Shown piece after piece: positions 9,070 to 32,106 of a stretch of DNA of 32,163 bases. Position numbers and translations under genes: made by a program. The stretch spans positions 1 through 32,163 of the forward strand of contig NIVC01004523.1 of the NCBI GenBank assembly GCA_002269645.1, given 5' to 3'. Each line of letters opens with the position of its first letter. Positions within the stretch are counted from its first letter, which is position 1. The stretch comes from Macrostomum lignano (taxonomy: Eukaryota). Below the pieces are notes generated by a model. The model worked only from the letters and a program-made list of their open reading frames with translations, ran no database searches and was not told the DNA's origin.

Positions 9070-12000
9070 TTACTTGGCAGACGCTCCCGGAAGCAGTCCG
9101 GCCTCCTTCGCCAGGAAGTAGAAGTACGAGTCCTGCTTAGCCAGCAGGTCCCGAGGAGGCGCGAACTCTCGGACCCGACCGCTGTCCAGCACCATCACCC
9201 GATCCGAGTCCATGATGGTGGCCAGGCGATGGGCGATGATAATCACGGTGCTGTCGGCGAACTGCTGTCTCACGGTGGCCATGATCAGCGAGTCGGTCTC
9301 CAGGTCGACAGCGGCCGTGGCCTCGTCCAGCACGAGGAGTCGACTGCGCCGCATGAGCGCTCTGGCCAGACAGACGAGCTGGCGCTGTCCTACCGACAGG
9401 TTGGTGCCGCCCTCTCCGCACTCGTGCGCCAGTCCCGCTGACAGACCGCGAGCCCAGCTGGACAGGTGCGCCGCATCCAGAGCAGCCCACAGCTCCTCGT
9501 CTGTGCGCTCATCGAACGGGTCCAGGTTCGATCTGAGACTGCCGCTGAACACAGTCGGCTCCTGCGGCAGGATGGTCAGAGCTGAGCGCAACGAGTGCAG
9601 GCCCAGCCGGTCGATTCGGACTCCGTCCACCTCGATGTGGCCAAAGGTCGACTCGATCAGACGGAACAGGCCCAGCGTGAGGCTGCTCTTCCCCGCTCCA
9701 GTTCGACCCACAATGCCCACCTTGTGACCCGGCTCAAAGCTCACGCTGATGCCCTGCAGCACCAGGTCGAGTCCCGGTCGATAGCGAGTGGCGTAGTTAC
9801 AGAACTCGACTCGACCTCTCGAAGGCCAGCCAGAGGGAGGCAGCGAGTCCGTTGTCCACGGCGCCTCCGTCTCCAGATTTGAGTACTCGTTAAGCCGCTC
9901 CACAGCCACGGTGTTGGTCTCCAATTTTGTCAACTCATGCACCAACCACTTAAGGTAGTCAGATATTTGAAGAGCGTAAGACACAGACAGTCCAACGAGA
10001 CCGGGAGTGAGCGAGTCGCGACCAAGGACCGCTAGCAAAGCGGCAATCACCACTGCAGCTGTTCCAAGAAGTTCCAATCTGAAGCCGAGCCACCTGTTTG
10101 AAGCCAGCTTTAGGAAGTAAAACCTGCGATGATTTTTTTCGAGAATATAAAGTCATACACAAAGACAATAAATCAGTAAGACTGACTGAAGCTTGTTACA
10201 GCCATAGGACTTAATTGAAATTTAGTTTTTGCAGATTCTTTCCGCTTTCTAACGGTACAGTTTCCATAAGTCACCTTCAATGCGTACGAGTAATACTGTA
10301 CAACGCCTACCTGGATCACCAAGCTGTTGACTTTTTATTACCCATTTTTATATTTAACAAACAATAAATGAATTCTCAAAAATCATATCTGCTTCTCACC
10401 TTGAATTATTATCAACTCGATAGTCTGATATTCCGACAAACCGCTGCTGCTGACGGAAAGCTCGAATGACCGCCGCGCCAGCGATGGACTCGCTGAAGTT
10501 CGTGAGTATCGGAGATCGCGATCTCGAGTCCAAACGACGGCTTTGCCGAGAGATGGGCAGGTAGAAAACCTGAATACCTGCGTAGATAATGCCGAGAGGA
10601 ACTACTGCGGCAAGAAATATTGGCGTCGTGTACGAAATGACAATTATGCAAGACACTGTGGCCATAAAGCTTTCCAAGTTATCGTTGACTATCATCGGCA
10701 GCTCTCGATCAACAACTTCCATGTCCTTGCTGAACCTGTTAACGATTCGACCAGTCGGTGTGGTATCGAAGAAACTCATCGGAACTCGAAACAGACGAGT
10801 CAGCAAAGACTTGTGGATTGAACGAGATGCTCTCAGTGCGGAGTAGACCCCCATTACAGCATATATACCAACAAGGACAACAATTCCTACTCCGAAGATA
10901 CCGTAAATGCTGAGGTAGTAGTCATTTATGTCTCGAAGGTATGCAGAGTTGTTCAGGTTTCCAGTGACGCTAGCATTCGAAAAGAGCGGGTCTGAAGTCC
11001 AAGTGGACAGCCACACGCTGCTGGCAATGTTGACAGCTGTGTAAGCGAGATGCGCCATTATGGTCATCAGACCCAGATGATATCCACGAGCTGCGATGTA
11101 AAATACATACGACTTAAGAGACACGCTTCCGGATTCCATTGTCTCCTCGTCAATCAACCGTCCGGATTGCTCAGCAGCCTTCCTGGTACCGTCCACATCT
11201 TCATCACGCGATGGTAGCTTCTCAGATGTTAGTTGGCTGATCCTGCAACAGAAATTTGAAAGCATGCAAGTGTTGACAACGAGTGGGTTCTGAAATTTGT
11301 AGTAGTATGGTTGAGCAGAAAACCCTCTGGGTAAATTACTTAGACGTTTGGCGCACAATCGAAGGCCTCTTCGAGTCAAGTCTGTCGGCAGTGTCTGTGC
11401 AGTGGCTGTTTACTGAGCTCGACGCCTGACTGGCGTGCTGAGGTGGCGAAGATTGACTTGGAGACGCTGCAACCACAGCCGGACTCTCTGCAGCTGCTTC
11501 GTGAGCAGAGCTTGTGCAGCTCGCGAGTCTCTGCAAGATCTTCGCTTTCTCCGCCGCCAACTCTTCGTCTTCTTCTTCTTCCTCTGGGGCTGCCGCGGCG
11601 ATTTCTGCGATCGAGACGCTGACGTCGCGAGATCTGCTGGCTCGCTTCCGCTCTCCGTCATGTAGGAAGAACTCCTTCAGGAAACTCGCGAACGGCCCAT
11701 CGTGATCCAGCAGATGCTCGTAGCTGCCCTGCTCGCTGATGCGACCGTTGTCAATGACGACAATCTCGTCTACGTGAGGCAACCAGTGAATGCCGTGAGT
11801 GACGAGAATTCGAGTCTTGTCACGAAGAAGACCAGACTTTCCAATCACCTAAAATGTACCAGTTTATCCTTAGGTTTTACCAACAATTAACAATACAGTA
11901 AGCAACTACGAGCTATTTTATCCATCTTTAAATGCAGACAATAGAGGCCCTGAATCATTATGCTGACCTCGTGGAAGAGCTTCTTGCCGACATGCGAGTC

Positions 12001-31600: not shown

Positions 31601-32106
31601 CCGTAAACCCTGGCATAAAATATTATAAAAAATCGTTATCTTTAGGCTTACGTGTCACTAAAGCGAATACAGAGATTTCTTGATGAAGACGATATCGATG
31701 ACTCCAGTGTACTGAAGCTGCCGTCCTCTGGTAAACAATTTTTTAATGAAATAAACTAAATTATCTGCTTCGTCAAAATTAATTGCAATCATTCTAAATT
31801 CCACAGAAAATCATGGGGCAGCGATTGAAGTTGTTAATGGATCTTTTGCGTGGAAACGAAGCGACACTGAGGCATTGTTACAAAAGTGAAGCCTGTTTAT
31901 TTCTTCTGTCTTTTCTCTGTACAGCAATATGTTTGTTGATATCAGTAATACAAATTCTCTATTACTTGCCAAAATTACAGCATAAACCTCACTGTACCTA
32001 GAGGCAGTCTCGTGGCGGTAGTGGGCAAAGTCGGTTGCGGCAAGTCTTCGCTGCTGCAGTCCGTGCTGGGGAAACAGTGAGACTCTGTGGCAGTGTTGCT
32101 ATGACG
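28673..32106 (+). CDS. ABCC1-like: ABCC/MRP1-like exporter, copy C, 5' part (TMD0, L0, TMD1, start of NBD1); continues beyond the window; four 1-nt indels (pseudogene or assembly errors)
   Basis: Exons 28673-28714, 28807-28980, 29093-29218, 29306-29443, 29560-30372, 30862-30958, 31044-31551, 31646-31730, 31807-31885 and 31981-32106. Walker A GKVGCGKS lies in the last exon. Frame breaks versus A and B: -1 at 30183-84, +1 at 30368-72, -1 at ~31486 and -1 at 32068-71. Confidence 0.88.

What the first reader, a model, noticed from the sequence alone, without database searches (positions are those of the whole stretch)
9070..32106. Domain-wise mosaic homogenisation of three ABCC paralogs: shared TMD0/NBD modules, private substrate-binding domains
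Seen in sequence: identity between copies switches abruptly along the gene. (1) Exon 2 to mid-exon 5 (TMD0 and part of L0), with introns 3-4, is near-identical in A (15409-14288), B (26931-25815) and C (28807-29920); A and C stay near-identical to ~14074/30134. (2) TMD1 and the start of NBD1 (end of exon 5 to exon 10) are diverged at silent sites, and the introns are not recognisably similar. (3) NBD1 and the linker, including introns, are near-identical in A (~11400-12436) and B (~23043-24082). (4) TMD2 (exon 13) is diverged. (5) NBD2 is near-identical again (A 9070-9923, B 20886-21739, constant offset 11816, roughly 15-20 substitutions by eye), and identity ends at the stop codon. Established: in ABCC/MRP pumps TMD1 and TMD2 form the substrate cavity, while the NBDs and TMD0/L0 handle energy coupling and trafficking. 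Inference: these are old paralogs under ongoing gene conversion that keeps the engine uniform, while selection prevents homogenisation of the specificity domains. The result would be a modular efflux-pump diversification system.
Basis: partly seen in the sequence, partly recalled or inferred. Interest (0 to 1): 0.8.

Follow-up and report, generated by a model that had tools for sequence, protein, structure and literature searches.

The report
Patchwork gene conversion among flatworm ABCC pumps
Three neighbouring MRP1-type efflux-pump genes of the flatworm Macrostomum lignano are old duplicates in which three stretches have been copied between genes recently and the rest has stayed very different; this is a clear but ordinary case of gene conversion, and nothing shows that selection organises it into a system.

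Summary
Three ABCC1/MRP1-like genes are present: A (15554-9070, -), B (27089-20886, -) and C (28673 to the window end, +). A and B alternate between near-identity and saturation. dS is 0.04-0.06 in TMD0+L0, in NBD1 core+linker and in NBD2, introns included. dS is above 1-2 in exon 1, TMD1 plus the start of NBD1, and TMD2. Six runs of identical third codon positions exceed every run in 10,000 shuffles.

The locus is Macrostomum lignano. Two other public assemblies show the same mosaic. A second A-type copy has different patch ends: a C-like TMD0/L0, and a B-like linker edge and 3'UTR. This indicates repeated, recent interlocus gene conversion among at least five copies.

The claim that selection shields the specificity domains is not shown:
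- C is a pseudogene here (at least three frameshifts) but has the same mosaic.
- A carries an in-frame TGA.
- The NBD1 Walker A region lies in a diverged island.
- dN/dS in the islands is about 0.15.
- A homology threshold for conversion is enough to explain the pattern.

Two patch ends do sit at the TMD edges, and 9 of 14 pocket residues differ between A and B, so selection is not excluded. This is a new example of a known process; interest is modest.

The parts
9070..15554 (-). Gene A, ABCC1/MRP1-like, 14 exons, all introns GT-AG. E1 15554-15513, E2 15409-15236, E3 15123-14998, E4 14910-14761, E5 14657-13836, E6 13751-13655, E7 13573-13065, E8 12983-12896, E9 12823-12751, E10 12648-12522, E11 12279-11968, E12 11848-11340, E13 11242-10400, E14 10123-9070 (TAA). 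In frame throughout apart from one nonsense codon.
   Evidence: Spliced protein-to-genome alignment and splice-site check; exon 1.
13965..13967 (-). In-frame TGA in exon 5 of gene A, at the start of TM6. Gene C has GGT here, and the A-type copies in two other M. lignano assemblies encode Gly (ELWHGILY).
20886..27089 (-). Gene B, ABCC1/MRP1-like, intact, 1633 aa. E1 27089-27048, E2 26931-26758, E3 26649-26524, E4 26434-26285, E5 26184-25396, E6 25303-25207, E7 25129-24621, E8 24549-24462, E9 24359-24287, E10 24199-24073, E11 23921-23610, E12 23490-22976, E13 22886-22041, E14 21939-20886 (TAA).
   Evidence: Aligns end to end with solved MRP1 structures (E=0).
28673..32163 (+). Gene C, head to head with B and cut by the window end in NBD1. 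E1 28673-28714, E2 28807-28980, E3 29093-29218, E4 29306-29455, E5 29560-30372, E6 ~30862-30958, E7 31044-~31551, E8 31644-31730, E10 ~31981-32107. It is a pseudogene in its private part. A 1-nt deletion at about 30184 is followed by a stop in the original frame, with +1 at 30368-30372. Further 1-nt deletions lie at about 31486 and about 32071.
14288..15411 (-). Homogenised block 1 in A: exon 2 acceptor to mid exon 5, covering TMD0 and the first part of L0, introns 2-4 included. It equals B 25815-26935 and C 28803-29920. A-B dS is 0.058. Intron 2 of B holds a private diverged patch (A 15226-15158). A-C near-identity continues to about A 14100 / C 30110.
12522..14287 (-). Diverged island 1 in A (B 24073-25814): rest of L0, TMD1, and the first third of NBD1 with Walker A (exons 5b-10). 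dS 2.2, dN 0.32, introns unalignable.
11400..12439 (-). Homogenised block 3 in A (B ~23043-24085): from inside intron 10 through exon 11, intron 11 and most of exon 12. This is NBD1 from the Q-loop onward plus the linker. Core dS is 0.043. The edge 11541-11400 is graded, about 90% identical to B.
9925..11399 (-). Diverged island 2 in A (B 21741-23042): end of the linker, TMD2 (exon 13), intron 13 and the TM17 part of exon 14. dS is saturated (1.1 in the exon 14 part); dN 0.14-0.32.
9070..9924 (-). Homogenised block 5 in A (B 20886-21740, offset 11816): NBD2 up to the stop codon. 16 substitutions, dS 0.051, GC3 0.78.

Best explanation
A, B and C are ancient, physically clustered ABCC1/MRP1-type paralogs of Macrostomum lignano undergoing partial concerted evolution.

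Shown: non-reciprocal copying between the genes (interlocus gene conversion) has repeatedly overwritten three internal segments: TMD0 plus the first part of L0, NBD1 core plus linker, and NBD2. The embedded introns were overwritten too. Exon 1 and the promoter, TMD1 with the start of NBD1, and TMD2 have kept their old, saturated divergence.

Inferred: patch ends are set mainly by where enough near-identical DNA exists to support heteroduplex formation. Homogenised segments therefore stay convertible and diverged segments stay isolated. Selection against conversions that reach the substrate-pocket helices may sharpen some edges, but it is not needed to explain the pattern.

Shown: in this window only B is intact. 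A carries one nonsense codon and C has several frameshifts. The homogenising process therefore acts on dead copies as well, in a neopolyploid genome with many redundant copies.
For: 1. dS is 0.04-0.06 in three blocks and above 1-2 elsewhere. Introns inside the blocks are 97-100% identical; introns outside cannot be aligned.
2. The runs of silent-site identity are far beyond chance.
3. Every block is an internal patch. Exon 1 and intron 1 of the three genes are diverged, and the 3' flanks diverge at the stop codon.
4. Block relationships are incongruent. The A-type copy on M. lignano contig NIVC01002441.1 (L001) matches A in TMD1 and TMD2 (3/264 mismatches in exon 5c, 0 in exons 6 and 9). Its TMD0/L0 is nearest to window C (0/112, 1/363 and 2/188 mismatches). 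Its linker edge (98% to B, 88% to A) and its 3'UTR are B-like. Part of its exon 14 matches neither A nor B.
5. The same mosaic appears in proteins from two other assemblies (P0121, P0122, P0184). This argues against an artefact of one assembly.
6. GC3 is 0.64-0.79 in converted exons and 0.34-0.62 in private ones, as GC-biased conversion would produce.
7. Graded edges and a range of within-patch divergence (about 0.5-5%) indicate several events of different ages.
8. C has frameshifts and A has a TGA, yet both share the patches.
Against: - No read-level or population data were available, so conversion is inferred from pattern, not observed.
- The three A-B blocks have similar dS (0.043-0.058), which one burst of events could also produce.
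- The introns inside blocks are not consistently GC-enriched (I4 and I11 are 0.34-0.35), so the gBGC signal is limited to exons and could reflect domain-specific codon usage.
- Two patch ends lie within about 10 codons of the pocket-forming helices. A purely homology-limited model does not predict this.
Confidence: 0.75

Rival explanations
1. Conversion would homogenise the whole gene, but purifying or diversifying selection removes converted alleles in TMD1 and TMD2. The family then works as a modular system: a shared engine with private substrate cavities.
For: - Block 5 starts 8 codons or fewer after the MRP1-R1249 position.
- A-C identity ends about 10 codons before the K332 position.
- A and B differ at 9 of 14 LTC4-pocket positions, including 332 (M/K), 335 (H/Q), 1245 (K/N) and 1249 (H/R).
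- The private blocks were under purifying selection for most of their history: dN/dS about 0.15 for A-B and dN 0.19 with saturated dS for A-C.
- A-type copies are intact in other assemblies.
Against: - C is a pseudogene and A has a nonsense codon here, yet both have the same mosaic.
- The diverged island includes NBD1 exons 8-10 with Walker A. The converted blocks include the variable L0 and linker.
- 9 of 14 pocket differences is not clearly above the roughly 40% background difference in the TMDs.
- There is no gene-wide excess of replacements.
- Short foreign patches occur inside TMD1 exon 7 of the L001 copy, so TMD1 is not closed to exchange.
Confidence: 0.2
2. The direction is reversed. 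A, B and C arose by recent duplication (dS about 0.05) of one gene. Their TMD1, TMD2 and exon 1 segments were later replaced from older, diverged paralogs elsewhere in the genome, by conversion or by unequal crossing-over that made chimeras.
For: - The three A-B blocks have nearly the same dS.
- Patches in the L001 copy match none of A, B or C, so more donor paralogs exist.
- M. lignano is a neopolyploid with three subgenomes (PMC10733133).
Against: - This needs at least three independent replacements per gene, each from a different donor, including the promoter and exon 1.
- Within-patch divergence varies from about 0.5% to 5% between pairs, so there is no single age.
- The mechanism is still ectopic recombination, so this is a variant of the main explanation rather than an alternative process.
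Confidence: 0.12
3. Assembly artefact. The near-identical blocks come from collapse or cross-polishing between paralogs in a repeat-rich polyploid genome.
For: M. lignano assemblies are hard to build. L001 contains many 1-nt indels (34 gap openings over 3 kb), and the public gene models are truncated or fused.
Against: - The blocks are not 100% identical. They carry scattered substitutions and intron indels.
- The mosaic recurs in the window, in ML2-derived proteins and in Mlig_3_7.
- Polishing cannot turn 65%-identical DNA into 98%-identical DNA over 1 kb with sharp ends.
- A and B have no frameshift in 9.7 kb of CDS, so the window is accurate.
Confidence: 0.03

Closest known systems
Candida krusei (Pichia kudriavzevii) ABC11-ABC1 tandem PDR efflux pumps (Lamping et al. 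2017, Genetics 205:1619, as summarised in PMC6053246)
   Same: These are adjacent ABC efflux-pump paralogs kept highly similar by recurrent ectopic gene conversion. Ectopic recombination also produces chimeras and copy-number change.
   Different: The pumps are fungal ABCG/PDR, not ABCC. PMC6053246 gives 98% DNA identity for the gene pair. It does not describe an alternation of three converted and three deeply diverged segments. The primary paper could not be read here.
Partial concerted evolution with divergence islands, e.g. human RHD/RHCE and the Innan 2003 / Teshima & Innan 2004 models (from my own knowledge, not checked here)
   Same: Duplicates are homogenised by conversion except in sub-regions that stay diverged. 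Theory allows either selection or loss of homology to maintain the islands.
   Different: In those cases selection on specific sites was inferred from population data. No such data exist here, and two of the three copies in the window are disabled.
Human ABCC6 and its pseudogenes ABCC6P1/P2 (from my own knowledge)
   Same: An ABCC gene exchanges sequence with neighbouring partial or pseudogene copies by gene conversion. Dead copies take part in the exchange.
   Different: Those are young segmental duplicates that are uniformly similar. They are not ancient paralogs with a domain-scale mosaic.
Mammalian MRP1/ABCC1 (solved structures, e.g. 9lg6, 6uy0, 5uj9)
   Same: B aligns over TMD0-L0-TMD1-NBD1-linker-TMD2-NBD2 (residues 10-895 and 1023-1627) with E=0. 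Walker A, signature and Walker B motifs are present in both NBDs.
   Different: NBD2 is about 60% identical and the TMDs about 27-35%. L0 and the linker are longer. Several LTC4-pocket residues are replaced.

Membership tests
Long ABCC (MRP1-type) transporter | Domain order TMD0-L0-TMD1-NBD1-linker-TMD2-NBD2 in one polypeptide | tested here: met
   B (1633 aa) aligns to MRP1 chains over residues 10-895 and 1023-1627, E=0. The exon models for A and B cover the whole guide protein.
Long ABCC (MRP1-type) transporter | Walker A, ABC signature and Walker B in both NBDs, with the ABCC-type degenerate NBD1 (Asp in place of the catalytic Glu) | tested here: met
   Read from the translations. NBD1: [32 protein letters not shown]2: [29 protein letters not shown].
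Long ABCC (MRP1-type) transporter | ATP-dependent export of organic anions or conjugates | not testable with these tools
   No expression or transport data. A has a nonsense codon and C has frameshifts in this window.
Interlocus (ectopic) gene conversion / partial concerted evolution | Abrupt switches between near-identity and deep divergence that include silent sites and introns | tested here: met
   dS 0.04-0.06 against above 1-2. Introns 3, 4 and 11 are 97-100% identical; introns 5-9, 12 and 13 are 44-74% identical with many gaps. Permutation test.
Interlocus (ectopic) gene conversion / partial concerted evolution | Internal patches flanked on both sides by diverged sequence, not one crossover point | tested here: met
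   Three separate patches in A-B. Exon 1, intron 1 and the 3' flank are diverged.
Interlocus (ectopic) gene conversion / partial concerted evolution | Block-wise phylogenetic incongruence when further copies are added | tested here: met
   The L001 copy groups with A in TMD1 and TMD2, with C in TMD0/L0, and with B in the linker edge and 3'UTR. Only one extra genomic copy was available. Protein-level site patterns in the converted blocks were too few to decide.
Interlocus (ectopic) gene conversion / partial concerted evolution | GC enrichment of converted tracts (gBGC) | tested here: inconclusive
   GC3 is higher in converted exons (0.64-0.79 against 0.34-0.62). Introns 4 and 11 inside the blocks are not enriched.
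Selection-limited conversion (divergence islands kept by selection) | Islands coincide with the sites that determine functional specificity | tested here: inconclusive
   Two edges lie within about 10 codons of the pocket helices. But island 1 also holds NBD1 exons 8-10 with Walker A, and the A-B edge of block 1 lies in the variable L0 next to a 21-nt indel.
Selection-limited conversion (divergence islands kept by selection) | All participating copies are functional and under selection | tested here: not met
   C has frameshifts in exons 5, 7 and 10. A has an in-frame TGA. Only B is intact in this window.
Selection-limited conversion (divergence islands kept by selection) | Signal of diversifying selection in the islands | tested here: not met
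   Average dN/dS is about 0.15. Site-level tests need many more copies and were not possible.

The most novel reading that the evidence does not exclude
Selection does hold the substrate-pocket cassettes (TMD1 and TMD2) apart against a continuous homogenising flux that runs through five or more ABCC1-like copies across the three subgenomes of M. lignano. The family would then behave as a modular set of pumps: one shared TMD0/NBD chassis with private cavities. Tract edges would be pinned just outside TM6 and TM17.
Probability: 0.2. Interest if true: 0.55.

Novelty: new member of a known kind. Interest (0 to 1): 0.35.

Why it matters
This is an unusually clean, domain-scale example of partial concerted evolution in an animal ABCC family. 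There are three converted and three unconverted segments within 6.5 kb, and a second copy shows shifted tract ends.

Practical consequences:
- Whole-gene trees, orthology calls and dS-based dating of these Macrostomum ABCC genes will be wrong unless made block by block.
- Short-read mapping and gene prediction in this neopolyploid model are confounded. The public models are truncated or fused.

If selection were shown to pin the tract edges, the locus would be a usable natural system for studying how conversion and selection partition a multidomain transporter.

Tried and rejected
- The first protein search, with the NBD2 exon of A, gave only hits of about 60% identity from many phyla. It missed the source organism because the public Macrostomum models lack NBD2.
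- The third protein search, with the shared TMD0 block, returned nothing although P0122 contains that block. This looks like a word-prefilter failure, and it cost the chance to list further Macrostomum copies.
- One search was only a draft script. One search got no answer and was rerun.
I rejected them after reading the DNA.
- Site patterns at protein level between the window and the ML2 model P0184 were too few to decide: two locus-type and two gene-type sites in NBD2. The same was true of the 585-nt B-side fragment at the L001 contig end.
- PDB searches of ORFs in the A-B spacer found nothing significant. Searches failed on stop codons.
- Lamping et al. 2017 is not held in the library.
- A variant genetic code reading TGA as sense was considered and dropped. 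A and B both end in TAA, but the same codon is GGA/GGT in every other copy, and no such code is known in animals.
- A 51-nt intron skipping the TGA was rejected. It would delete 17 residues of TM6 and is shorter than every real intron here (71-276 nt).
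Full report
WHAT IS THERE

The window is eukaryotic, with GT-AG introns of 71-276 nt. It holds three MRP1/ABCC1-like genes. I then corrected them by reading the DNA.

- Gene A lies on the minus strand at 15554-9070. It has 14 exons.
- Gene B lies on the minus strand at 27089-20886. It has 14 exons, is fully open and encodes 1633 aa.
- Gene C lies on the plus strand from 28673, head to head with B, and runs off the window end inside NBD1.

B aligns end to end with solved MRP1 structures (E=0). It has canonical Walker A, signature and Walker B motifs in both NBDs.

SOURCE ORGANISM

A full-length search with B returned two Macrostomum lignano proteins. P0121 is 98-100% identical to B in B's private regions. 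P0122 is 94-100% identical to A.

A third UniProt model, P0184 (A0A1I8JHB3, 3538 aa), is a fusion of a B-type gene, a mobile-element remnant and an A-type gene. The same remnant lies between B and A in the window at 16353-17053. The window is therefore M. lignano or something extremely close to it. M. lignano is a neopolyploid with three subgenomes and extended paralogous regions (PMC10733133).

CHECK OF THE OBSERVATION

Identity in 100-nt windows between A and B:

- 97-100% from the exon 2 acceptor (A 15411) to A 14288
- 55-75% to A 12440
- 96-100% from inside intron 10 (A 12439) to about A 11450
- 55-78% to A 9925
- 97-100% to the stop codon at A 9070, with 16 substitutions in this last block

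C shares the first block, and A-C near-identity runs on to about A 14100 / C 30110.

Nei-Gojobori estimates for A against B:

- Homogenised blocks: dS 0.058, 0.043 and 0.051
- Other blocks: dS 2.2, saturated and 1.1
- Diverged blocks: dN about 0.32 (0.14 in the exon 14 part), so dN/dS is about 0.15

Introns inside the blocks are 97-100% identical. Introns outside cannot be aligned. Six runs of identical third codon positions (121, 99, 63, 51, 50 and 41 codons) exceed the longest run seen in 10,000 shuffles, which was 39.

- Each gene has its own short exon 1: [28 protein letters not shown] and [14 protein letters not shown]. These exons and intron 1 are diverged, so block 1 is an internal patch.
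- Intron 2 of B contains a private patch of about 70 nt at about 35% divergence, while A equals C there.
- Block 3 begins in intron 10. Exons 8-10 of NBD1, including Walker A, therefore belong to the diverged island.
- The 3' edge of block 3 is graded: A 11541-11400 is about 90% identical to B, with dS about equal to dN at about 0.10.

GENE INTEGRITY

- A is in frame across all 14 exons but has a TGA at 13967-13965, at the start of TM6. C has GGT there, and both A-type proteins from other assemblies read ELWHGILY.
- C has a 1-nt deletion at about 30184, which brings a stop into the original frame, and a compensating extra A at 30368-30372. It has further 1-nt deletions at about 31486 (exon 7) and about 32071 (exon 10). 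None of the deletions is in a long homopolymer.
- A and B have no frameshift in 9.7 kb of CDS, so these lesions are unlikely to be sequencing noise.
- For A against C in TMD1, dN is 0.19 with saturated dS. C was therefore constrained for most of its history and decayed recently.
- The TMD0/L0 part of C is intact and 97-100% identical to A and B.

MECHANISM

Near-identity that covers introns and silent sites cannot come from protein-level constraint. Sharp-ended internal patches flanked by saturated divergence are the signature of interlocus gene conversion between old paralogs.

Independent support comes from contig NIVC01002441.1 of the Mlig_3_7 assembly (locus L001). It carries another A-type gene.

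- Its TMD1 and TMD2 exons match A: 3/264 mismatches in exon 5c, none in exons 6 and 9, and about 97% identity in exon 13.
- Its TMD0/L0 is closest to window C (0/112, 1/363 and 2/188 mismatches), not to A (2/112, 8/361 and 7/188).
- Its linker edge is B-like: 98% to B and 88% to A.
- The first 70 nt or so of its 3'UTR equal the 3'UTR of B.
- Part of its exon 14 matches neither A nor B.
- Short clusters of foreign differences sit at both ends of its TMD1 exon 7.
- The gene upstream of it on that contig has the same NBD2 but yet another 3' flank.

Tract ends therefore differ between copies. Within-patch divergence ranges from about 0.5% to about 5%, and more donor copies exist than are visible here. 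This means repeated and recent conversion among at least five copies.

GC3 is 0.64-0.79 in converted exons and 0.34-0.62 in private ones. That fits GC-biased conversion. Introns 4 and 11 are not enriched, so I treat this only as suggestive.

IS SELECTION KEEPING THE SPECIFICITY DOMAINS APART?

Evidence in favour:

- Block 5 begins 8 codons or fewer after the position of MRP1 R1249.
- A-C identity ends about 10 codons before the position of K332.
- A and B differ at 9 of 14 positions that line the LTC4 pocket of MRP1: 332 M/K, 335 H/Q, 381, 440, 550, 594, 1243, 1245 K/N and 1249 H/R. The residue list is from my own knowledge of the bovine MRP1 structure.

Evidence against:

- The pseudogene C and the nonsense-bearing A show the same mosaic.
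- The diverged island contains a third of NBD1.
- The converted blocks contain the poorly conserved L0 and linker.
- dN/dS in the islands is ordinary.
- 9 of 14 is not clearly above the roughly 40% background replacement in the TMDs.

Conversion requires stretches of near-identity. Segments at 65% identity are therefore isolated without any selection, and segments that are already alike stay convertible. I conclude that conversion is well supported, that selection is possible but unproven, and that calling this a 'system' goes beyond the evidence.

COMPARISON WITH WHAT IS KNOWN

- Recurrent gene conversion between adjacent ABC efflux-pump genes is documented for ABC11-ABC1 of Candida krusei (PMC6053246, citing Lamping et al. 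2017).
- Partial concerted evolution with divergence islands is textbook for RHD/RHCE and similar pairs, and ABCC6 exchanges sequence with its pseudogenes (both from my own knowledge).
- Searches of the paper library found nothing on gene conversion in Macrostomum ABC genes.

This is a new and tidy instance of a known process, not a new kind of element.

ARTEFACT CHECK

The blocks carry scattered substitutions and intron indels, so they are not perfectly identical. The mosaic recurs in three assemblies. Polishing cannot turn 65% identity into 98% over a kilobase. I give the artefact reading about 3%; only reads can settle it.

VERDICT

- Observation: confirmed.
- Interpretation: partly supported.
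- Novelty: new member of a known kind.
- Interest: 0.35.

Noticed in passing
window 618-4086 and 5539-8600 (+ strand): A tandem duplicate of another multi-exon gene, 76-82% identical in its exons. One ORF (3496-4086) weakly matches sodium/bile-acid cotransporter (SLC10) structures, E about 6e-7. ORF 5529-6125 has no PDB match. A solute-carrier pair therefore sits beside the ABCC cluster.
   Followed up: partly
window 16353-17053 (- strand), between B and A: Broken ORFs (e.g. ...KAPVLAHFDDKKPLLLDCDASSYVSER... and ...DKEALAVMYGVKPFKSY...) look like a retroelement RT/RNase H remnant; this is from memory, and there was no PDB hit. The same peptide stretch is embedded in the public M. lignano protein A0A1I8JHB3 (P0184). 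That protein is thus a false fusion of a B-type gene, the remnant and an A-type gene.
   Followed up: partly
window 19576-19733 and 20127-20284: A 158-nt inverted repeat, 94% identical. It flanks a 103-aa ORF (19783-20094, -) containing LPPYSPFINP, which resembles the C-terminal motif of Tc1/mariner-type DDE transposases (from memory). No significant PDB match was found. It may be a decayed DNA transposon just downstream of B.
   Followed up: partly
L001 (NIVC01002441.1) and proteins P0121, P0122, P0184: The public M. lignano models of these genes are truncated or fused. P0122 stops in TMD2, P0121 contains retained-intron and frame-shifted stretches, and none includes an A-type NBD2 except the fused P0184. 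The Mlig_3_7 contig shows many 1-nt indels relative to the window: 34 gap openings in 3 kb and 11 in 586 nt.
   Followed up: partly
window 1496-1613, 18510-18581; L001 16842-16956: A short dispersed repeat of about 70-120 nt, 87-88% identical. It occurs upstream in the SLC10-like region, in the A-B spacer, and near the MFS gene of the other contig.
   Followed up: no
L001 13361-17144: The A-type gene on the other M. lignano contig is followed by an MFS_1 transporter gene, not by the SLC10-like pair seen in the window. The spacer to the upstream ABCC gene is 3.2 kb there against 5.3 kb in the window. The two loci are paralogous or rearranged, not simple alleles.
   Followed up: no
window 27090-28672: B and C are head to head. 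Their start codons are 1.58 kb apart, so they may share a bidirectional promoter region. A 58-nt stretch in it, 76% identical, lies as an inverted repeat near both ends of the spacer.
   Followed up: no
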